A stretch of 64,000 nt of DNA, taken from assembly GCF_021869535.1 (NCBI RefSeq), contig NW_026262690.1, positions 116,932,001 to 116,996,000 of the forward strand, in the 5' to 3' direction. The position numbers were made by a program, and so were the translations under genes. Positions 324 to 33,280 of the stretch are shown one piece after another. The notes beneath the pieces were generated by a model. It was given only the letters and a program-made list of their open reading frames with translations, searched no databases and was not told the DNA's origin. The DNA comes from Mytilus californianus (lineage: Eukaryota). Position 1 is the first letter of the stretch. The number at the start of each line of letters is the position of its first letter.

Positions 324-829
324 CTGTTTCTATAAATATAACATATATGATTAAAGAGCCTTGTGGTTATAAGTCATGGCATGACTGTGGAACTGCTGTA
401 GGCTATTAACAAGTTTCAGGAAGATGAAACGTTTATTGCTAGAATTGAAGTAGTTTTCTACGAAATGAAATGAACTGATTGTTTTTGTAATAACGTACAA
501 CTTTCTGCTTCATTTGCATTAAAATTTGTGCATTTTACAACTTCTTTGCTGTAACGCATACAAAATTAGCATGAAACGTTTATGTTTACAAATAATAATA
601 AATAATTGAACTATTCATTTTTTAATCTTTGATATTATCTTTTTCCAATCTTTGAGAGATTACCGAAATCATGTACGCACGCTTATAAAAAATATTTAAA
701 CAATTTGATTAATATCATACATGTTCTTCCTGTAAATTATTTTGTTTAAAAATGTGTTCAACTTGTTATAAACATTCACATTAGAGATGTAGCCCAATCC
801 CGTTCTTTTTTTCTTCAATGTATTGAAGT

Positions 830-1060
830 TTGTCCGTTTATAAATTTATAAAAGATTAAGAAACTAAGGTTTCAACTCCATCAGGCAAAGTTGACCTTAG
901 ATGAATTTGGCTATTATTCAAGGTAATTTTGGTCATATAGCTCTTCAAGTGTTTCGAGTCTTATACATCTTTGGCCTTGCCCTTCAAATTTTGACTTTGA
1001 GCTTTTCTAATGAAGTTAAATCCAGAAAAAAGCAACTATTTTATGGAGTGTTATTTTCAT
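830..1060 (+). mobile_element. Retrozyme-like repeat unit (subfamily 1) with degenerate hammerhead at 1001-1028
   Basis: Aligns by eye with 13400-13630 and 13755-13960. Carries CTAATGA-AGTTAAATCCA-GAAA (G5 lost, stems I and III decayed). Confidence 0.65.
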
Positions 1061-1820
1061 TTACTAACACTAGGTCGATTCCTCTGCTAGTGGACACATC
1101 TTACTAACACTAGGTCGATTCCTCTGCTAGTGGACACATCTTACTAACACTAGGTCGATTCCTCTGCTAGTGGACACATCTTACTAACACTAGGTCGATT
1201 CCTCTGCTAGTGGACACATCTTACTAACACTAGGTCGATTCCACTGCTAGTGGACACATCTTACTAACACTAGGTCGATTCCTCTACTAGTGGACACATC
1301 TTACTAACACTAGGTCGATTCTTCTGCTAGTGGACACATCTTACTAACACTAGGTCGATTCCTCTGCTAGTGGACACATCTTACTAACACTAGGTCGATT
1401 CCTCTGCTAGTGGACACATCTTACTAACACTAGGTCGATTCCTCTGCTAGTGGACACATCTTACTAACACTAGGTCGATTCCTCTGCTAGTGGACACATC
1501 TTACTAACACTAGGTCGATTCCACTGCTAGTGGACACATCTTACTAACACTAGGTCGATTCCTCTGCTAGTGGACACATCTTACTAACACTAGGTCGATT
1601 CCTCTGCTAGTGGACACATCTTACTAACACTAGGTCGATTCCTCTGCTAGTGGACACATCTTACTAACACTAGGTCGATTCCTCTGCTAGTGGACACATC
1701 TTACTAACACTAGGTCGATTCCACTGCTAGTGGACACATCTTACTAACACTAGGTCGATTCCTCTGCTAGTGGACACATCTTACTAACACTAGGTCGATT
1801 CCTCTGCTAGTGGACACATC
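1061..1820 (+). repeat. 40-bp minisatellite, 19 near-identical copies (TTACTAACACTAGGTCGATTCCTCTGCTAGTGGACACATC)
   Basis: Exact 40-nt periodicity with only scattered single substitutions and no spacers. Unit matches a sub-segment of the dispersed repeat seen at 13290 and 13640. Confidence 0.97.
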
Positions 1821-1889
1821 AAGTGTATCATAAGCTCAGTAATCAGTGTGTCGGTATTAGTTACATGATTTAAATTTGAATTTTTCGAA

Positions 1890-2095
1890 AAAATAAGGAT
1901 TTTCTTATCCCAGGAATAGATTACCTAAGCCGTATTTGGCACAACTTTTTGAATTTTGGGTACTCAATGCTCTTCAACTTTGTACTTGTTTGGCTTTATA
2001 ACTTTTTTGATCTGAGCGTCACTGATGAGTCTTAGGTAGACGAAACGCGCGTCTGGCGTATTAAATTATAATCCTGATACCTTTGATAACTTATT
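1890..2095 (+). mobile_element. Hammerhead-carrying dispersed repeat (retrozyme-like subfamily 2)
   Basis: Shares blocks (CCTxAGxxGxATTTGGC, GCTCTTCAA, TGAGCGT) with subfamily 1 and contains the intact hammerhead at 2016-2059. Confidence 0.7.
2016..2059 (+). ncRNA. Type I hammerhead ribozyme, intact core
   Basis: Stem I GCGUCA(2016-21)/UGGCGU(2054-59); CUGAUGA 2022-28; stem II GUCU/AGAC with UAGGU loop; GAAA 2042-45; stem III is the palindrome ACGCGCGU (2045-52); GUC cleavage triplet, cut after 2053. Confidence 0.88.
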
Positions 2096-2142
2096 ATAAC
2101 AAACCTTACTTAAACTCTCCGTTGATAACATTTTTGCGTAGG

Positions 2143-2170
2143 GCGTTCCTAATGAAGGTGAATCCAGAAA
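2143..2170 (+). ncRNA. Degenerate hammerhead remnant (subfamily 1)
   Basis: GCGTTC-CTAATGA-AGGTGAATCCA-GAAA; G5 is mutated and the stem III/cleavage half is missing. Confidence 0.55.
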
Positions 2171-3631
2171 ACATATCCAACTAAGTCAGACATCACGTGA
2201 CTTTTGTGACGTATACCAGCCGCCATTTTGTATTATATTGCCCCATATAAAATGCATAGGTGCTTCAATAAAGTTGAGTTTTCTCATGAACCTGACCCGT
2301 TTTCTAACTTTTGCAAATCAATCCTTGATATTCAAACATATTTCTATCAAACAATGTTGGTCCTAACAGTTTAATTTTTGATTAAATTCTGTCACTGGAG
2401 AATCGTAAAAACATGTACTTTTTCTCGTTATTTCTCCGTTGACTCAATGCTAAATTACCGATACCCATGTCTACTTGTATAACAAATAAAGAAATTCCGT
2501 TAATAAAAATAAAACTTTGCAACTCGATTAAGTGTATTCAAACATATATCTGGCGAAAAATACTATTTAAAACAGTTTAATTTCTGGGCAATTTCGGTCA
2601 AAAATCGATTTAAAAAAGTGAATATTTCGGGATTTTTCAAAATGGCGGATGATGTATATGGAAATGTTGCATCAAATCGAGGATTTGTATAGTAAGACTT
2701 TCCTTGATTTAATTTAATTTTCATGTAGAATCTCTGATGTTTCTGTTATTTTCTTTGGTGATATTTCGATATGATTGATTTCAAAATTTATTGATTTAAA
2801 TAAAAAAATATTATTTTAAGTGTGACACGGGAAAATTTTATTTTGACAGATATCCAGGATATACTGTTACCAGAAAATAGTTAACAATAAAATTTATGAT
2901 AAAATTTTTTCTCTTCTTTTTTTAAAAGGTTTTTTTCCTGTTTTCTGTATAATTTATCTTTCTTTAGAAATATATTTATACATTCCTTTTAGAACAAAAA
3001 AATATTTACGTCCAAAGAGAGAAAAAAATCCCAACAATTATTATAGATAAATATTCCATACCTTCAAAATCCCATCACTTGACGAACAGGTGAACTCTGA
3101 CTTTGGATGTAATGTTACATAACAATATATTGTCAGGTAGACGTGCAAACCAAAAGCAACCAGGTGACATTAAACATCCTGTGTATACATGTATTACCAG
3201 AGTTTAAATTTTGTGATATACAAAAGTTTTCATAACTGTACAAATAAATATCTTCTCTTCCCCGTGTCAAACCAGAAGAAGTATGTATCATAATAAACTT
3301 AAAGAAAATATGAATATTATAAAAAAAAATCTTCAAAAAAAAAATTTTTGCTTTAAAAGATAATCAAACTAATATTTATGTTTCTATGATTATTTAAAAA
3401 AAATATTTTGATTCAAATTTTAATTTAAATGGATTTTGTATTATTTCGTAAAAAATTAAACGAGATTTCATTGAATATGATTTTATTATTTATTTTTTTA
3501 ATTCAATATTTTAAGCAAAATCCAGGCATTCAATAAATCGATATAAAGTTAAACTTGTGTAAAAAAATTTATTATTGTATACATTTCAACAGAGACATAT
3601 AATACAATTGCTTTGATTTCAACAACATTGT

Positions 3632-3730
3632 ATACCCGACAATATTTATCGACAGAGTTATCGGTCCTGAATAGGACTGATATAGTTGGGTATGAAAAAC
3701 GCTTCGGACGCAACTAGTTTATAAAGTGTG
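3632..3730 (+). other. 3' half of a subfamily-1 hammerhead preceded by a nested double hairpin
   Basis: GAAAAACGCTTCGGACGC at 3694-3711, followed by the same downstream flank as at 13601. Hairpins ATACCCGAC/GTTGGGTAT and TATCGGTCCT/AGGACTGATA. Confidence 0.5.
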
Positions 3731-6700
3731 ATTTTTCATCATATCAAAGTAGATTACATAACATGGGGATATTCTGTGTTGCGCAGGTTACTTATTCATA
3801 TGTTTCACCTTTGTTTACTTGAATTCTTATTGATAGTAACTAAATCTTTATTTTTGCGCTTAGAAAAAAAGTGGACTTTAATAATATAAAAAATATAATT
3901 TTGGTTAACCTGTGGTAATTTTCTCACAGGAGGTCAAGTCAGAAAATATTTTTGAAACGATTCATATACACATTGTCATTAAGACGATATTTTTATGATA
4001 TCATTTCAAAAAATATTAGATTAAGAATTTCTAAATACATGTAATATTTTTATTTGGATATGTACACGTCATAGTTAAATGTATATTACAATACATAAAC
4101 ATGTGTACGGAACGTTAAATTTAAATAGACCACGGAAAGGTTTCCCAATAAATACCCTTTTTATACAAGTCTAACTCTAATGTGTGATGTGTATTATTTC
4201 ACATAATTGTGTAAATATTTGTAAATATTCATCAATAGTTTTCAGTCATTTAGCGAAATTGTATAATTGATTTAAGAAAGCGTTATAAAAGGCATTTTTA
4301 TTGTGATCAATGAAAAAGTTGATTTAAGCCAGTTATTCTATATATATTCGACATATTGTATTTGATAGTCAACCGTGGCGACAGGTATAAATAACGGACC
4401 ATTTGAGCTCTCTTCCGAGTTTTGGCGGATTTTTAGTTGCTCAGTCTTAAGTTTTCTTTGGAAGGTTTTATGACCTCTTAAATTGACTTTCCTTTTGTTC
4501 TTTTGGTCCTAGTGTTGTTTGCTTTTTTCGATTCATGATTGAATTGCCAGTCGGTATCAATTTTCTCCTACTTTTTATTTAATTTTCATGCTACCGAGTT
4601 TTCTTGTTAATAAACATTGCTTGCATTTGAATAAATCCATTTTAGTCCTTAGAATAGACGACCTTAATTCAGTCTTATGTAGTATATTGTGCAATGTATA
4701 AATTATTAACATGATTTTATTTGTTTTAAAGACCTTTCATTCATTTGAAAGAAAAGTTATTTCAATTTATTTATTTGATTTTTGTTTAGTTTTATTGCCT
4801 TCGACTTAAGTATAGCTCATTGAACAGGATTTTAGAATAGTTTAATTTATCTTCATATTGTATTACAAATATTAAATCAAGTTTTATAATCAACATCTTT
4901 TTACTTGTTGACCAATAAACATGCAATGTGAAGTTTGACTAGAAATGTCAATATAAATGCATGATCTTGACTGGAAATGTCAATATAAATACATGCTTCC
5001 GAGTCCAGTGCTCACGGTATTTGGTTTGGAATCAAAAAGATTTGGTATCAGATTCCTGTTTTCTTTGACTATATGGTACTTTGATTAAGAATATGCATGC
5101 CTTAATTCCCAGTATACCTAATATGACATGTTGTCAACGTTTTGTTTTAGTTCGATTCATATAATTTAAATGGATTTACATCGATAAGCAGTTGCCTCTT
5201 ATTCAATGGCAGTTTACATTGTTCGAGCTATTCAGTGTTGCTCGCTGTTTTCATGTCCGCATGTCTTTGCAAATACCTATATACTAGATTGTCTTTTATG
5301 TTATCGATGTTATGTGTTTCCTTTAGATGGAGTCTCTTTGGGAAATTATATGTTTTGCAAAATAGAAATCAGATTAGAAATAAGTCGGTTTTGGTTGTTT
5401 TCAATCTTTGCTGTGCGTCGTGGATTATTGCAGAAAAGAGAGGCGAAAGATACGATAGGGAAATTCACACTCCCAAGTCGAAAATAAACTGACAACGCCA
5501 TGGCATAAAAACGAAAAAAAAGACCAAAAGACAAACACCAGTATATAAAACACAACATAGAAAAGTAAATACTGAGCAGCAATACGAACTCGACCAAAGC
5601 TCAGGGGTGTGCTTAGGTGATCTCATATTAGTTTCCTTTCAGTGTTTTATGGACTCTCATTTGCCTTTCTTCTTTTATCCATAATGTTGTCTGTTTTATT
5701 TGGACTAATGGTTTTTAATTGCCCTTTTTGAACATTATTTATAGTTCTGTGTTCCTGGCAGCAACAGTATATGAAGATAAGAATAATCAGTTTGATTTGT
5801 GGCGTATATAATCATACAACAACAAAATGTGTTTATATTTAACACACATATATACATATATAACAACTTTATTTTAAACATCATCTACAGTTCTGTATTA
5901 CTGGCAGCGAAACAGCATATAAAGATAAGAATAATCAATTGTATTTGTGGCGTATAGAATCATACAACAACAAAATGTGTAATTTGCTGTTCATAAACGC
6001 GGAAACACATATAAATGCACGCAAAGTTTCCATTTTAGGAGTAAACAAAATGCGTAATAGATTACTTTAATCCTGGTGGTATATAAGACGTTTAAAAAAT
6101 ACAATGTTTCAGATTTAGTTTGGTATCTTGTAACTTTGTATTATTGATTGATTGCTTTTAATGGTCGAGGAAGCTGGAGTACCCGAGTAGAACAACCAAC
6201 GTTCGGCACGTAAACTGATAATCGTATTCGATTAAGATTGTCTTGTTGAAATTTACTGTTGTAAGTTACGATATCTTCAAATCATCAAACAATAATGATA
6301 AAAACTTTTTGATGGTAATGAAAATTTTATTACAATAAATGCACGTTTATCAAACGAAAATTGTTGCATTTCAATAACCAAACATTCACAATTGCAAATC
6401 AGTATTATAACTGTTCATACTATATAACAGTCCGTAAAACATAGTTTATATATATATATATATATCCCTTTCATAAATATAATTAGCTTACAATAAAGCA
6501 TAAATCAATGAATACATGTTTATATAAATGAAATCTTATCAACCAACCACTATGTACTTAGATTCTAAATATTACAGCTAAGTGTATAGACAGTTCAAAC
6601 TAATGATCATGATTCATGGACGATAAAACATTCTCTAGTGCTGTAAAATTGGTACTGTTTATATTATCATATCTACTCTGTCATAGATTTTCGAAGTTCT

Positions 6701-6868
6701 TTGTCCTTGCCAGAATTCCTTGGAACAATTTTGATGTAGATGTAAATGTAGAATACGGCAAACAAGGAAACATTCCAATTATTCTTAGTATGTAAGTTGA
6801 AAATTGTCTCCTGATGGTCATATTAGGGCATATGGAATCCCATTGTAGGTCACTGTTAGTGCCAGAGT

Positions 6869-9242
6869 TCATGGCTCAAATCGTATACTTTGTTTCGCAC
6901 TAGGACAAACTAAGAGATGTTGATATAACATTTTCTGTAACTTTGCCTTTTCTGCACGGAGATTCCTAATTTCATTTGACTTCTGTGTGTTGTCTGCTTC
7001 CAGTTCTTGTATTTTCTGCAATGATAACTTTAGTTAAAAGCTACAAATCTGATGATATTTTAAAACTTATAAATATTTGCTTTTATATATGCCTGATAGA
7101 TCGTCAGAAACTGCCGAAAGTTAAGAAATTTAAAAATTACTTATTAGTTAAAACACAATTTTTAACCCTTTTTACAAATATTTACAACTCTGTTATTTTC
7201 AATACCTATAGATATTTCAAATTTGTTTAATTACAATTTCATAAACACAAGTTTAAGTTTTATCAAAGGCAAATCTTATATTCTTCAAATACTATTTTGA
7301 AGAATATACTGATATATCCATTCACACGTACCTTGCAAAGTGATGTTGAATTATTTTTCTTTCTATCACGGAATCTCTGTGCTGCCAGTCTATTTTGTTC
7401 ACGACGTTTAACAATTTTATCACGTTCTTCCTCTGTAAGCTGAAACAAAGTATTTGAAATTCAATGACAATTCTTAAATAATTCATAAAACTCTTCCTTT
7501 GTAGTTGCTTCGGTGCCTTTTAAAACTGCAGATTAAAACTTTCCGATTCCATCATATGATATACCCTGTCTATTTCGTTCATTCTTTAGTAGTTTTTTAG
7601 AATTTGGATGCGTTAATGAAAGAACTTTTAATTTGAAACATTCTTTTTGCTTTTTGTATTGAGAGAATTTAGTGATTTCAGACCCCTTACCGTTGCCGTT
7701 AACTTTTTTTGCCAGTTGTCTAGAGTATGGACGATCAAAAACTTAGATCCGTTATAAAGATCCTTTGCTATTGCTGTAAACAGTGTCCGACCCCATTCGT
7801 CACAACTCGGCCGATTCCGTACCTTCATCTAAGATAGAAGGAGAGTAGCGGATTCACCCGAGGATTGCCGATTGTGTCCGACCCCAGACCATTACATGTG
7901 TTTAAGGTTTTTTGTATCATTAGATTGCCTTTTGTTTGGCATAAACTTATGTGTTTACAATTAAACCCTCCAACACGCTTTCCCAAAATTTGACCAAATA
8001 ATATAAAAACATCTTGTCAGCGGTCTTGAAAATTACATTATCGTCAATCTTCCAATTAGCTAAGGCAAATTAAGATTACTGATGTTCTAATATCATTAAT
8101 TGCCAAAGAAGACAAATGAAGGTTACAAACAATAGCTAAACCTGTCTTTCCGTGTCCGAAAGATGGCTACTAAATATCCGATTTCATTACATCTCCTCAC
8201 CGGTCCTGTTAACGGCTTTAAAATCCATAGTTTTCTGTCATTGATAAATTGTATACAATGTGTGTTATGAAGTTAAATCATTAAAAAGTAAAATAACAAA
8301 AATACCGAACTCCAAGGAAAATTCAAAACGGAAAGTCCCGTATCAAATGGCAAAATCAAAAGCTCAAACGCATTAAACGAATGGAAAACAACCGCCATAT
8401 TCCTGACTTGGAACAGGCATTTCCTTATGTAGAAAATGGTGGATTAAACCTGGTTTTATAGCTAGCTAAACCTCTCACTTGTATGACAGTCGCATAAAAT
8501 TCCATTATATTGACAACAATGTGTGAACACAACAAACAGACATAATAGGTAAAAATGTCAAAAATAGGGGTACAGCAGTCAACATTGTGTTATAATCTTA
8601 ATCACTATAAAAACAAACAAATATATCAACAAAGAAAAACAAAACGGCATATAGACAAAGCACAAAAATGAATTAACCTACTTCATGCTTTGTTTCTTCT
8701 AGAAATTCTACTTTCATTTCGTGTTAACCTACCTCATGCTTTGTTTCTTCTAGAACTTCTACTTTCAGTTCGTGTTATCCGTGTTGAAGACCGTACTTTG
8801 ACCTATAATGGTTTACTTTTTTAAATTTTGACTTGGATGGAGAGTTGTCTCATTGGCACTCATACCACATCTTCTTATATCTACATAACCTACCTCATGC
8901 TTTGTTTCTTCTAGAAATTCTACTTTCATTTCGTATTAACCTACCTCATGCTTTGTTTCTTCTGAAGTTTAAATGTTAACCTACTCCTGCTTTATTTCTT
9001 CTGAAGTTTAACTGTTAACCTACCTCATGCTTTGTTTCATCTGGAAATTCTACTTTCATTTCGTGTTGGCCCTTTGCTAATCGTCTTGACTGAATTGTAC
9101 ATTTTAACTCTTCTTTTATCAGTGGCGCCATGTTCCCGGTTCCCAATGCTAGAAGTGTTGCAACTTCCAAATTGTTGTTGCCGTTTGCCATTTTAAACAG
9201 TATATTTTCTTCAAAGTCACACACATAAGAATTATCAAACAT
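6869..9242 (-). CDS. ATF3: ATF3/JDP2-like bZIP transcription factor, paralog A, 157 aa; CDS exons 9242-9024, 7439-7332, 7015-6869
   Basis: All introns GT-AG, phase 0. N-terminal APLIKEELKCTIQSRRL resembles the ATF3 motif TPFVKEELRFAIQNKHL. 108-nt basic-region exon (LTEEERDKIVKRREQNRLAAQRFRDRKK) as in Fos/ATF3 genes. Zipper exon ends HLLVCP. The symbol is family-level; orthology is untested. Confidence 0.88.
8282..8665 (-). mobile_element. Dispersed repeat (SINE-like, family uncertain) in intron of paralog A
   Basis: Related fragments occur elsewhere in the window (about 4400-4560, 5480-5610, 14340-14420); resembles common Mytilus interspersed repeats. Confidence 0.45.
8673..9065 (-). repeat. 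Five extra copies of the 3' end and splice donor of paralog A coding exon 1
   Basis: Copies at about 8673-8723, 8724-8774, 8887-8935, 8936-8963 and 8976-9004 versus the real exon end at 9015-9065; a SINE-like tail fragment interrupts at 8775-8886. Confidence 0.9.
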
Positions 9243-13269: not shown

Positions 13270-13975
13270 TGTTATTTTCATTTATATCATTAGGTCGATA
13301 CCACTACTGGTGGACTTCAAGTCTCCGGGGTATCATCAGCTCAGTAGTCAGTGCTTCGGTACTGACATGATTTATAACATACTTTATTAAACTATACATT
13401 TATAAATTTCGCAATTATAAAGCAACAAAGGTTGCAACTACCTCAGGATTAATTGACCTTAGATGGATTTTGGCAATTCTTTTTCGTCCCTTTTAGTCAT
13501 ATAGCTCGTCATGTAATCAAGTACGTATACATCCTTGACTTTCAAATTTTTGGGTAAGAGCGTTCATGATGAAGATAAATCCAGAAAAGCGCTTCGGACG
13601 CACTAAATTTAAAAAAGTGTTTTTGTTTTTCATTTTCTAGCATTGGTTCGATACCGCTGCTGGTGGACTGTTAGTCCCAAAGGCTTATATCAGCTCAGTA
13701 GTCAGTGCTTCGGTATAGACATGATTTATTAAATACATTTCTTAATTTCGCCGTTTATAAATTTATAAATTATCAAGAAACTGAGGTATCAACTCTTTCA
13801 GGATATAACCTTAGATTGATTTGGCTATATTTTTTTTATCCCATTTGGTCATATACAGCACTTCACGTATTCAACTATTTATACATCTTTGGCTTTTAAA
13901 TATTTGGGTTTTAGCGTTCCTGGTGGTTGTAAATCCAGAAAGAGAAACCAAATTTATAAAGTGTATTTTTCAGTG
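13270..13975 (+). mobile_element. Tandem pair of ~354-nt retrozyme-like units (subfamily 1)
   Basis: Two direct repeats; hammerhead cores at 13566 and 13920 are 354 nt apart. Confidence 0.75.
13560..13601 (+). ncRNA. Type I hammerhead, near-intact (C3 to A substitution)
   Basis: Stem I GCGUUC/GGACGC; AUGAUGA; AGAUAAAUCCA; GAAA; palindromic stem III AAGCGCUU (13587-94); UUC triplet. Confidence 0.7.
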
Positions 13976-29225: not shown

Positions 29226-30520
29226 GTGATAGATGTTAGGAGAATTTGTATTAAAGCATTTTTAAAGCAATGACACTTATATCAGTCGAAAATTTATTAA
29301 TGTTGGTATTTTTAATATATGATATTGCACGAATTTATTCAAATGATATCTTTTTCCTGTCTAAAATGACTATTTCAGCCATAGACAGTACGACAACTAC
29401 GTTTACGACAAATCTGTTCCGAATGATACCAAGTTGGGAGAATTTACACTTATCTATTGAATAGGACTATGTATATATAAATTAAAAAAACATTATTAAT
29501 AGACCATAAGTATATTCTTACGAGCAGATGTGAACATGGCATACATTTAAATTACACAATGATTGAAATATGATTAATGAAAAGTAGTTCACAAAATATT
29601 TTATAATGTAATCGATCTTTGAAAATTTCAAGCAGAGTTGAGCTTTTAACACGCTCGTAGCATGTCATTTGGAAGATACCAAAGAAAGTAAAATATTAGT
29701 AACTAGTATAATCAAATATTAAGTTTGGAATTCGATGTAAATTTCACTGTGTTTTTTCATATAAAGTCGGAATTTTCAGTATAGACTTTTAACATTGGGA
29801 CAAACCGTATAGAATATTAAGATGTTAATTTCTTTCTAATAAAAAATCGTAGGAATAAATATTCAAATACTTTTGTATTACAAAGTATAGACTTGAAAGT
29901 TTAGGACAGACGGAGCAATCTTTCCTTTCTATTTTTATGTTTTGATTTTCCTTGGTGGTGCGTTCTGACGGTGGTCCCTTCTTATGCAGGGTGTATTTCT
30001 CAATTAAACATATGGTTCGATATGCGCGGGTTTGCTGTGACATTTCATATATTAATCAGGGTAATATTTTCTTTACTTACAAAATCCTACAAAGGAGTAC
30101 CGGTCAAACCTTTAATGAATTTTATCTAATTGTAAGATGTATAAAGGAATTATCACATTTTTATAGTAGTATAATTTATAAGCTAACAAGTTGAGGAATT
30201 GTCCTTCCAATCTGCCTTTTTTACTTTTAAATAGCTAAAAACTTATCGTTAGATGTTATGATTATATTGCAGTTGTTCATTCATTGCGTCTGGTCCTTTT
30301 TCGCTAATTTATGGTTTAACATTTTCATTATTTTTTTTCTATAAAAATGATGTACAAATATTTTTGGACCATAGAACAGGTCGCGTCTTCCTGTACTAAC
30401 TATGCCATTTTTGAATGAGTTTAAATCACAGTACAACCGCCAATATCAGAGTTCAAGGCCTTCCAAGGTCAAGAATGTTGTCAGTGATTGTCTCATATAT
30501 ATATATATATATATATATAT

Positions 30521-30733
30521 GGTCATCGTAGCGACTACCAATGCAAGCCAGACCTCCCTCTCAGTCGACATTTGAGATCCCCTGGCCACACTAAGGCAGA
30601 TCTCAATCGACTGACCATTACAATCATTGACCACAACTCTGCTTGGTCTAGGGAGGATAGACTCACTCGGGAAAGATTTTGGATAAGAAAATTAACAACT
30701 TTGGCACCAAATGGGATAAATGAAAAGATGTAG
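30521..30733 (+). pseudogene. C-terminal fragment of a Penelope GIY-YIG endonuclease
   Basis: HRSD...PLSRHLRSPGH...L.ITIID...R..RERFWIRKLTTLAPNGIN matches the PLE endonuclease tail pattern. The ORF start MSHIYIYIY is a microsatellite artefact. Confidence 0.85.
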
Positions 30734-31323
30734 TTCGACTCCATGCAGTGCTTCACATTTGGGTTGTATTACTTTTTATTACAGTCTCTGTTTCTATTTC
30801 TTTACCTTACTCATCTCTAAAATAAATCTGTTGAATATACCAATTTAAATTGCTTAATTTTTTGAGGGATGTAAAAGTACCAAGCCACGTTCAACTAGTT
30901 AACCTTAGTCAAAATTTATTATTATATTTTAACGGCCGTTTGTTTGCGATGTTTAAATACGCAGACTCTGTTGCAACTACTCTACCGTTGTCAAATTTGA
31001 AATATTTACAAATTTAGATCGTTCAGTGCTGTTTATTTGGAATTCTTATTGACGCAATCGTTCTTGTAACATCATAACTGTCGTCACCGTTAAAGCTTTA
31101 GAATTGTGCTAGTTCATATCGCACATTATTATTTTTATTTAAAGCATATATTTGAACTCTCTGTTGTAATTAGTCATATAACCTATGTCGTGTTTAACAC
31201 ATATTTAGAATTGTGCAAGCGTCTTACCTGATGTTCGGTTTGACATTTTTATTGTATAAATTTCAAGATTTGTATAGTTTAATCTAAGTAGACTGATATA
31301 TGATTCATTCAACATCACAATCA

Positions 31324-31368
31324 TATTTACTGATGAAGGATATCTGTTATCCGAAATATTTATAAATA
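31324..31368 (+). ncRNA. Minimal type I hammerhead motif in the Penelope 3' region
   Basis: Stem I UAUUUA/UAAAUA; CUGAUGA 31330-36 plus an extra A; stem II GGAUA/UAUCC; GAAA 31353-56; stem III rudimentary and imperfect. Confidence 0.65.
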
Positions 31369-31424
31369 ATTACATTTATAGTTCCTTTTTTTGTTATTGG
31401 TGTTGTTGTGTACACTTTTTAGGC

Positions 31425-31461
<37 letters not shown>

Positions 31462-33099: not shown

Positions 33100-33280
33100 A
33101 TGAAATGAAAACCCATTGACAAGCCACCAAAAAAAAATGGAAACACGTTTTAAAGTGCATGCGTCCGAAGAGCTTTTCTGGATTTAAATTCATCAGGAAC
33201 GCTCAAAGCCGAATATTTGAAAGCCAATGATGTATAAGAACCGAAACAGTTGAAGAGCTATATTACAAAAAAGGACCACA
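33100..33280 (-). mobile_element. Partial retrozyme-like unit (subfamily 1) on the minus strand
   Basis: Reverse complement aligns with 13490-13640. Confidence 0.7.
33161..33202 (-). ncRNA. Type I hammerhead, core intact but stem II weakened
   Basis: Minus strand reads GCGUUC-CUGAUGA-AUUUAAAUCCA-GAAA-AGCUC-UUC-GGACGC. Confidence 0.68.

What the first reader, a model, noticed from the sequence alone, without database searches (positions are those of the whole stretch)
2016..2059. Intact type I hammerhead ribozyme with a palindromic stem III (dimer-type self-cleavage)
Seen: every conserved core nucleotide is present (CUGAUGA, GAAA, GUC), with a 6-bp stem I and a 4-bp stem II. Stem III is the perfect palindrome ACGCGCGU. 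Established: type I hammerheads with short palindromic stem III, as in newt satellite 2 and metazoan retrozymes, cleave as dimers, and tandem hammerhead retrozymes making small circular RNAs have been reported in Mytilus. Inference: this copy could still self-cleave after nt 2053. The class is known; this locus and its activity are not established.
Basis: partly seen in the sequence, partly recalled or inferred. Interest (0 to 1): 0.75.

Follow-up and report, generated by a model that had tools for sequence, protein, structure and literature searches.

The report
Solo hammerhead copy of known mussel retrozyme
The flagged 44 bases are a genuine, intact-looking self-cutting hammerhead RNA motif, but it is one truncated stray copy among about 4,000 of a mussel jumping element (a "retrozyme") published in 2020, so it is ordinary.

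Summary
Window 2016-2059(+) has every hammerhead core base, a 6-bp stem I (two G-U pairs), a 4-bp stem II and the palindrome ACGCGCGU. It aligns end to end with Rfam Hammerhead_1 at 33.1 bits (cut-off 34; E 1.7e-6).

It is not a new locus type. Window 1873-2096 is a 224-bp, 5'-truncated solo copy of a ~355-nt repeat. That repeat's exact ribozyme core occurs 4,152 times in this 1.65-Gb genome, often in tandem arrays of period 354-355.

The ribozyme differs only in loop 2 from the published Mytilus galloprovincialis retrozyme clone Mg353 (PMC7229834). That clone, with one ribozyme, self-cleaves at about 0.1 per min, and its family makes abundant circular RNAs.

The copy sits inside an older, related "family-2" retrozyme-like element whose own two ribozyme-like motifs here are dead. 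With one live ribozyme, this locus cannot release a circle.

In four RNA-seq runs the family is highly expressed from the ribozyme-sense strand. The reads come from other copies, the flanks have zero depth, and no RNA ends pile up at 2053/2054.

The "dimer-type" reading is only partly supported: energy modelling favours a double hammerhead, but there is no partner in cis.

This scan has already noted hammerhead retrozymes 146 times in this genome. Known class, known family, low interest.

The parts
2016..2059 (+). Type I hammerhead ribozyme motif. Stem I 2016-2021/2054-2059; core CUGAUGA 2022-2028; stem-loop II 2029-2041; GAA 2042-2044; helix III palindrome 2045-2052; C17 at 2053; predicted cut 2053/2054.
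   Evidence: Rfam RF00163 at 33.1 bits, full-length match. Coordinates verified. Unique in the window, none in shuffles.
1873..2096 (+). 224-bp, 5'-truncated solo copy of the ~355-nt 'family-1' mussel retrozyme. It covers unit positions ~172-355 plus 1-43, counted from the cleavage site.
   Evidence: 94-97% identical to many genomic copies (over 3,600 first-look candidates, 40 scored), many in arrays of period 354-355. BLAST to a natural unit: 96.4%. Joining the flanks restores a continuous family-2 sequence, an empty-site test.
830..1872 (+). Older, related 'family-2' retrozyme-like element, the host of the insertion. It includes a dead ribozyme-like motif at 1001-1033 (CTAATGA instead of CTGATGA; the GCGCTTCGGACGC segment, i.e. 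most of helix III, the cut site and the stem I 3' strand, is deleted and reads AAGC).
   Evidence: 83-86% identity to over 1,800 first-look candidates. BLAST to a family-2 unit from L039. Motif read directly.
1061..1820 (+). 40-bp minisatellite, 19 copies, 98% matches. It is an expansion of an internal segment of the family-2 unit (the CACTGGGTCGAT..CTGCTG box).
   Evidence: TRF. Homology of the 40-mer to the unit's internal box. The exact array is unique to this locus.
2097..2171 (+). Continuation of the family-2 host element after the insertion, with an internal deletion of about 150 nt. It ends in the 5' half of a second dead family-2 motif (2143-2171, CTAATGA).
   Evidence: BLAST to family-2 unit positions 130-169 and 317-345. 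Alignments. Sequence.
2172..3694 (+). Young non-coding repeat of about 1.5 kb (97-100% identical copies, about 300-380 first-look candidates). It is inserted into the second family-2 motif. The rest of that motif (CGCTTCGGACGC...) resumes at about 3696-3735.
   Evidence: copies. (no ORF of 100 aa or more). (right junction and resumed motif).

Best explanation
Window 2016-2059 is a bona fide type I hammerhead ribozyme sequence. It lies in a dead-on-arrival, 5'-truncated 224-bp solo insertion (1873-2096) of the known ~355-nt Mytilus non-LTR retrozyme.

How the family works (from PMC7229834 and the RNA reads here): tandem units are transcribed, each unit's hammerhead cuts after GUC, and the ~355-nt monomers are circularised, probably by a tRNA ligase. 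The RNA is then copied back into DNA by a non-LTR reverse transcriptase; a Penelope-like element is the candidate.

Shown here: insertions share a fixed 3' end about 41-46 nt past the cut site and have variable 5' ends. That is the signature of target-primed reverse transcription that often stops early. The window copy is such an early stop.

It landed inside an older, ~70%-identical sister element whose own ribozyme-like motifs at this locus are mutated, or split by a later transposon. With only one live ribozyme, a transcript through this locus could at most be cut once, at 2053/2054. It could not yield a circle.

No transcription of the locus was detected. Cleavage competence of this copy is inferred from its identity to a tested ribozyme; it is not shown.
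For: - Motif and significance.
- Family size: the exact core CTGATGAGTC-N5-9-GACGAAACGCGCGTC occurs 4,152 times, 0 in the reversed control. Arrays have period 354-355.
- Published identity: the Mg353 clone and the family consensus carry the same ribozyme apart from loop 2, and the same internal box. The paper reports about 5,000 copies, 350-390-bp repeats, kobs about 0.1 per min, and circRNAs up to about 1% of total RNA.
- Insertion model: joining the flanks reconstitutes the family-2 sequence ACATGATTTA|TAACAAACC, with family-2 coordinates running 45-132 then 130-169.
- Ends: the 3' end falls at unit position 38-46 in about 20 loci, with one exception (L023, position 188). The 5' ends fall at positions 6, 58, 81, 101, 110, 120, 128, 140, 147, 212, 244, 268, 297 and 307. 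One array (L020) has a clean 17-nt target-site duplication.
- Structure is conserved between the sister families: stem I pair A-U becomes C-G and helix III pair C-G becomes A-U (both compensatory); three further one-sided changes keep pairing.
- RNA: depth of 100s to 2,400x over 1873-2096 only. Flanks 1821-1860 and 2101-2160 have zero depth. Read ends continue into full family-1 units. 94-99.6% of reads carry T where the window has G at 2035. First mates lie 2.5-fold to 17-fold more often on the minus strand in three of the four runs (X21-X23), least near the ribozyme, which implies ribozyme-sense RNA if those libraries are stranded in the usual way.
Against: - The Rfam score is 0.9 bit under the family's gathering cut-off.
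- The monomer's minimum-energy fold is not the hammerhead fold (-10.1 against -5.7 kcal/mol; z-score 0.65).
- The loop-2 variant UAGGU is rare, 7 of 4,152 cores, and its effect on activity is unknown.
- Clear target-site duplications were found for only one array. At this locus only a 3-5-nt overlap (TTA / ATTTA~TATTA) can be seen, which could be microhomology.
- The loci used for the end analysis were picked by similarity to the window copy, which could bias the 3' end result.
- The RNA runs carry a coded species label and may not come from the assembled individual or species, so zero flank depth does not prove the locus is silent.
Confidence: 0.9

Rival explanations
1. The locus is an active retrozyme source that releases a small circular RNA.
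For: The family does this. The family RNA is abundant and reads cross the cut site.
Against: There is only one hammerhead in the whole 64-kb window with this core. The upstream and downstream family-2 motifs carry CTAATGA, and one has lost helix III while the other is split by a 1.5-kb insertion. Flank depth is zero, and over 94% of reads carry non-window letters.
Confidence: 0.02
2. The ribozyme works mainly as a double hammerhead. The palindrome ACGCGCGU of two molecules forms an 8-bp helix III, so this solo copy could be cut only in trans, with another family RNA.
For: The double-hammerhead structure evaluates at -29.5 kcal/mol, near the cofold optimum of -30.6. The single hammerhead fold is -5.7, below the monomer optimum of -10.1. 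The palindrome is kept in the sister family as AAGCGCUU. Family RNA is very abundant.
Against: The published clone with one ribozyme self-cleaves co-transcriptionally at about 0.1 per min. The paper groups 2-bp helix III motifs with the efficient invertebrate ribozymes. A 2-bp stem with a palindromic GCGC loop is automatically an 8-nt palindrome, so its conservation does not prove dimer use. No transcript of this locus was seen.
Confidence: 0.25
3. The solo ribozyme has been co-opted by the host to process a host transcript, like the conserved intronic hammerheads of amniotes.
For: The core is intact. The window holds genes elsewhere (an ATF3-like note at 7332-7439).
Against: No reads lie on the unique flanks. 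The copy is young (96% to the family) and sits in a nest of decayed repeats and a fresh transposon. Most intact cores in the genome are likewise solo: about 88 of the first 100 listed have no intact neighbour one unit away (my count).
Confidence: 0.02
4. It is a chance match to the hammerhead consensus.
For: The score is just under Rfam's cut-off. Folding energy is no better than shuffles.
Against: E is 1.7e-6, with no match in shuffles. The motif is identical to thousands of family copies and to an experimentally active clone.
Confidence: 0.01

Closest known systems
Mytilus galloprovincialis non-LTR retrozyme (clone Mg353; HHR A/B families), Cervera & de la Pena, Nucleic Acids Res 2020 (PMC7229834)
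   Same: The ribozyme is the same base for base except 2 bases of loop 2 (UAGGU here, UUUGU in Mg353; the majority variant here is UAUGU). It shares the internal CACTGGGTCGATGCCACTGCTGGTGGA box, the unit size (354-355 against 350-390 bp), the copy number (about 4,150 exact cores against about 5,000 motifs), low GC (38%), tandem arrays and high expression.
   Different: The window copy is a 224-bp truncated monomer, not a tandem repeat. It belongs to the UAUGU-loop subfamily, whose non-ribozyme part looks roughly 85% like Mg353 by eye. The species of the assembly was not given.
Newt / axolotl satellite-2 hammerheads (HHR_Amex1)
   Same: Type I topology, a short helix III capped by a palindromic tetraloop, a tandem ~330-350-nt repeat context, and a possible double-hammerhead route.
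   Different: The amphibian motif has a 1-bp helix III and is nearly inactive as a monomer. The mussel design has 2 bp and is active as a single motif. There is no sequence relationship beyond the core.
Penelope-like element (PLE) hammerheads / pLTR
   Same: Type I hammerhead, tandem or partial-tandem insertions, a fixed 3' end with variable 5' truncation. PLEs are the proposed mobilisers (preprint 10.64898/2026.07.22.740005).
   Different: No coding capacity. No detectable sequence similarity between the family-1 or family-2 units and the PLE fragment noted at 30495-31459 of this window (no hit at E<1e-3).

Membership tests
Hammerhead ribozyme type I (Rfam RF00163) | Conserved catalytic core: C3 U4 G5 A6 N7 G8 A9, G12 A13 A14, and an A15.1-U16.1 pair followed by C17. 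| tested here: met
   CTGATGA at 2022-2028, GAA at 2042-2044, A2045...T2052, C2053.
Hammerhead ribozyme type I (Rfam RF00163) | Three helices around the core, with the open end in helix I. | tested here: met
   Stem I 6 bp (2 G-U), stem II 4 bp plus a 5-nt loop, helix III 2 bp plus the GCGC loop. Full-length alignment to model positions 1-45.
Hammerhead ribozyme type I (Rfam RF00163) | Score at or above Rfam's gathering cut-off (34 bits). | tested here: not met
   33.1 bits, E 1.7e-6. It misses by 0.9 bit. Some other genomic hammerhead matches score 34.4-44.8. I treat this as a curation threshold, not as evidence against the motif.
Hammerhead ribozyme type I (Rfam RF00163) | Site-specific self-cleavage leaving 2',3'-cyclic phosphate and 5'-OH ends. 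| not testable with these tools
   Inferred only from the near-identical clone Mg353, kobs about 0.1 per min. RNA-seq shows no end pile-up at 2053/2054, but such ends are poorly captured, and ligated circles also read through the site.
Hammerhead ribozyme type I (Rfam RF00163) | Stems supported by covariation. | tested here: met
   Within family 1 the stems hardly vary, which is uninformative. Against sister family 2 there are 2 fully compensatory pairs (stem I A-U to C-G; helix III C-G to A-U) and 3 one-sided pair-preserving changes (the structural register was read by hand because MAFFT misplaced the 2-nt gap).
Metazoan non-LTR retrozyme (Cervera & de la Pena 2020) | Short tandem repeats (150-450 bp), each unit carrying a type I hammerhead. 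| tested here: met
   Met for the family: arrays of period 354-355 with one ribozyme per unit. Not met at this locus, which is a single truncated unit.
Metazoan non-LTR retrozyme (Cervera & de la Pena 2020) | Low GC (under 45-50%) and non-coding. | tested here: met
   The unit is 38% GC and the fragment 34%. No ORF of 100 aa or more in 2100-7000; no ORF scan was run on the 355-nt unit itself.
Metazoan non-LTR retrozyme (Cervera & de la Pena 2020) | Expressed as abundant monomer-length RNA, mostly circular. | tested here: inconclusive
   Family RNA is abundant, ribozyme-sense and continuous across the cut site. Circularity could not be shown on a truncated reference. Circles are shown by northern blots and RT-PCR in the paper.
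Metazoan non-LTR retrozyme (Cervera & de la Pena 2020) | No LTR, PBS or PPT; target-site duplications longer than 4 bp when present. | tested here: inconclusive
   One array has a 17-nt duplication (L020). Most solo copies showed none by a crude test. At this locus only a 3-5-nt overlap is seen. LTR, PBS and PPT were not searched for specifically.

The most novel reading that the evidence does not exclude
This is a family-level reading, not a locus-level one. Solo and tandem insertions of the ~355-nt retrozyme almost all end at one fixed point 41-46 nt downstream of the ribozyme cut site, and they start at variable points. The one family-2 array end examined (L039) and this window's family-2 element appear to end at the equivalent place.

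This would mean cDNA synthesis starts at one defined site on a circular or multimeric RNA, not at the ribozyme-made ends. That fits rolling-circle, target-primed copying by a Penelope-like enzyme. Most genomic hammerheads, including this one, would then be abortive by-products that can no longer make circles.
Probability: 0.45. Interest if true: 0.35.

Novelty: already known. Interest (0 to 1): 0.15.

Why it matters
It matters little on its own. It is one more copy of a published mussel retrozyme, and as a solo copy it cannot make the circular RNA that makes the family interesting.

It has two modest uses:
- It is a clean, datable example of nested insertions: a retrozyme into a sister retrozyme, then a young transposon into that. 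This shows the families were active at different times.
- Together with about 20 other loci, it shows a fixed 3' end and variable 5' ends. That is direct sequence evidence for how these elements are copied, and it could be turned into a genome-wide test of the Penelope-like, rolling-circle model.

Tried and rejected
- The Rfam gathering scan of the whole window listed nothing. The permissive scan explained why: the score is 0.9 bit short.
- I considered that 860-1060 and 2100-2175 might be target-site or flanking repeats of the insertion. Rejected: they are two units of a separate, older sister family.
- I considered that the family-1/family-2 junction at 1872 arose by recombination between homologous units. 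Rejected: the family-2 sequence resumes exactly where it stopped.
- A target-site duplication search at 21 loci was mostly negative with crude boundaries. Seven of those loci share flanks and so are copies of one larger repeat, not independent insertions.
- The GGGTCGATGCC box resembles a tRNA-type B box, but ARAGORN finds no tRNA-like structure in family-1 or family-2 loci or in window 800-3800. The idea was left untested beyond that.
- MAFFT misaligned the two ribozyme designs by putting the gap in helix III, so the count of structure pairs was not run and the pairs were compared by hand.
- Neither retrozyme unit shows similarity to the Penelope-like fragment at 30495-31459.
- A formal alignment of the full Mg353 clone to a genomic unit was not done. 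Only the short ribozyme and box segments were compared, by eye.

Full report
**1. The observation**

- stem I: GCGTCA (2016-2021) with TGGCGT (2054-2059), six pairs, two of them G-U
- core: CTGATGA (2022-2028)
- stem II: GTCT/AGAC around the 5-nt loop TAGGT (2029-2041)
- GAA (2042-2044)
- the palindrome ACGCGCGT (2045-2052)
- C17 at 2053, which puts the predicted cut between 2053 and 2054

A permissive Rfam scan of 1800-2300 gave one match, Hammerhead_1 (RF00163). It covers model positions 1-45 of 45 at 33.1 bits, E 1.7e-6. The family's gathering score is 34, so the default scan of the whole window was empty. The motif occurs once in the 64 kb, and none of 100 dinucleotide shuffles gave a match.

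One refinement: within one molecule, helix III can only be 2 bp (A-U, C-G) closed by the GCGC tetraloop.

**2. What it belongs to**

A search of the window's own genome (1.65 Gb, 175 contigs) with 1820-2320 returned over 3,600 first-look candidates. The scored ones were 94-97% identical over window 1872-2096 only. Many lie head to tail with a period of 354-355 nt.

The exact core CTGATGAGTC-N5-9-GACGAAACGCGCGTC occurs 4,152 times, against 0 for the reversed control. Loop 2 has two main variants. The window's own loop variant occurs 7 times.

The family is published. Cervera & de la Pena 2020 (PMC7229834) report the following for Mytilus galloprovincialis:
- about 5,000 type I hammerheads in repeats of 350-390 bp
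- co-transcriptional self-cleavage of a cloned genomic copy at about 0.1 per min
- circular RNAs amounting to up to about 1% of total RNA

Their supplementary sequence of clone Mg353, and their consensus, carry the same ribozyme as the window except for two bases of loop 2. They also carry the same internal CACTGGGTCGATGCCACTGCTGGTGGA box.

**3. Anatomy of the locus**

I used one natural unit from locus L020, cut from cleavage site to cleavage site (355 nt), as a ruler. On it, window 1872-2091 aligns to unit positions 172-355 plus 1-38 at 96.4%. By eye the copy runs to 2096, unit position about 43.

Upstream and downstream the similarity to family 1 collapses to about 60-70%. Those flanks belong to a second, older family:
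- 830-1029 matches over 1,800 first-look candidates at 83-86%.
- 1788-1872 and 2094-2134 match family-2 unit positions 45-132 and 130-169.
- 2143-2171 matches family-2 positions 317-345.

Joining 1781-1869 to 2097-2172 recreates an uninterrupted family-2 sequence (...ACATGATTTA|TAACAAACC...). So the family-1 piece is an insertion into a family-2 element, with at most a 3-5-nt overlap at the junctions.

Family 2 is a sister retrozyme-like family:
- It is about 70% identical to family 1 over about 250 nt.
- Its unit is 352 nt.
- Its motif CTGATGAAGGTAAATCCAGAAAAGCGCTTC is present 4,872 times at up to 1 mismatch, often at a spacing of 352-355.

At this locus both family-2 motifs are dead:
- 1001-1033 reads CTAATGA, and the GCGCTTCGGACGC segment (most of helix III, the cut site and the stem I 3' strand) is deleted and reads AAGC.
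- 2143-2171 also reads CTAATGA. It is split by a young, non-coding repeat of about 1.5 kb (2172-~3694; 97-100% identical copies, about 300-380 first-look candidates). The motif resumes after it at about 3696.

The 40-bp minisatellite at 1061-1820 (19 copies) is a local expansion of the family-2 internal box. The array is unique to this locus.

**4. How the family is copied**

In about 20 loci the 3' end of a solo copy, or of the last unit of an array, falls at unit position 38-46. There is one exception, at 188 (L023). The 5' ends scatter: 6, 58, 81, 101, 110, 120, 128, 140, 147, 212, 244, 268, 297, 307. One array (L020) is flanked by a 17-nt target-site duplication. The family-2 array in L039, and the family-2 element of this window, appear to end at the equivalent place.

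This is the pattern of target-primed reverse transcription from a fixed start with frequent early termination. Multi-unit products fit copying round a circle or along a multimer. The 2020 paper proposes exactly that and names Penelope-like elements as candidates. A 2026 preprint argues the same for vertebrates.

Two caveats apply. The loci were chosen by similarity to the window copy. Seven of them share flanks and are not independent.

**5. Can this copy act?**

The core and all stems are identical to the majority family copy. The only difference is U to G at 2035, in loop 2.

Energy evaluations:

| Structure | Energy (kcal/mol) |
|---|---|
| Single hammerhead fold | -5.7 |
| Monomer optimum | -10.1 |
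| Double hammerhead, helices I and III swapped between two molecules | -29.5 |
| Two-molecule cofold optimum | -30.6 |

So a dimer route is energetically attractive. However, the published single-ribozyme clone cleaves on its own, and the paper reserves obligatory dimer action for amphibian motifs with a 1-bp helix III.

The palindrome is kept in family 2 as AAGCGCTT through a compensatory C-G to A-U change. Stem I shows a compensatory A-U to C-G change plus three one-sided pair-preserving changes. This supports structural constraint on the ribozyme. It does not by itself prove dimer use, because a 2-bp stem on a palindromic GCGC loop is a palindrome anyway.

**6. Expression**

Four raw-read RNA-seq runs of one coded species were laid on 1821-2400 at 92% likeness.
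- Depth over 1873-2096 is in the hundreds to about 2,400x, from only 6-18% of each run.
- The unique flanks 1821-1860 and 2101-2160 have zero depth.
- Reads overhang 1875 and 2091 into the rest of a full family-1 unit.
- At positions that distinguish the window copy, nearly all reads carry the other letter (2035: 94-99.6% T; likewise 1893, 1927, 2077 and, less completely, 1962 and 2004).
- Only 0-13 reads per run are 99% or more alike.

The signal is therefore the family, not this locus. In three of the four runs (X21-X23) first mates lie 2.5-fold to 17-fold more often on the minus strand, the excess being smallest near the ribozyme. In the usual stranded protocol that means RNA of the ribozyme-sense strand.

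Reads cross 2053/2054 at the highest depth, and no pile-up of ends was reported there. That fits ligated circles or uncut multimers, but it gives no direct evidence of cleavage. Whether the runs come from the assembled species or individual is unknown, so silence of the locus is likely but not proven.

**7. Verdict**

The motif is real. The class and the family are already known. The copy is a truncated solo insertion that cannot make a circle and shows no transcription.

The scan's own notebook lists 146 hammerhead/retrozyme notes for this genome. They include a family-2 array at 13270-13975 and a Penelope-like fragment at 30495-31459 of this same window. My BLAST confirms the family-2 identity of 13270-13941.

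The only mildly new element is the fixed 3' end with variable 5' ends of the ~355-nt families. It deserves an unbiased genome-wide count.

No sequence was treated as human-like, and no N stretch was touched.

Noticed in passing
window 830-1872, 2097-2171, 3696-~3735; also 13270-13941 and 33132-33271(-): A second, equally abundant retrozyme-like family: 352-nt unit, motif CTGATGAAGGTAAATCCAGAAAAGCGCTTC-GGACGC, 4,872 copies at up to 1 mismatch, tandem spacing 352-355. Its hammerhead-like motif keeps stems I and III through compensatory changes but has a weak stem II (an A.A at the base, then 2 G-C pairs). A motif search that expects a canonical stem II might miss it, so it may be absent from the published HHR A/B census. 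I did not test this.
   Followed up: partly
window 1061-1820: The 40-bp minisatellite (19 copies, 98% matches) is an expansion of the retrozyme's internal CACTGGGTCGAT..CTGCTG box. The GGGTCGATGCC core of that box resembles a tRNA-type RNA polymerase III B box (GGTTCGANNCC). ARAGORN finds no tRNA-like fold, so the resemblance is untested.
   Followed up: partly
window 2172-~3694: A very young non-coding repeat of about 1.5 kb (97-100% identical copies, about 300-380 first-look candidates, no ORF of 100 aa or more). It is inserted into the second family-2 motif, with a likely 5-bp duplication GAAAA. No clear terminal inverted repeats were found, and its class was not determined.
   Followed up: partly
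L009-L014, L022 (G000 C154, C132, C110, C46, C13, C88): Seven family-1 copies begin at the same unit position (128) and share identical flanks. A truncated retrozyme fragment has therefore been captured inside a larger repeat that has itself multiplied.
   Followed up: no
RNA run X24 laid on window 2042, 2032, 1995-2003: In the random-primed run about 20-25% of family reads carry A instead of G at the position of catalytic G12 (2042), together with a linked set of other changes. This suggests an expressed subfamily whose ribozyme should be inactive.
   Followed up: no
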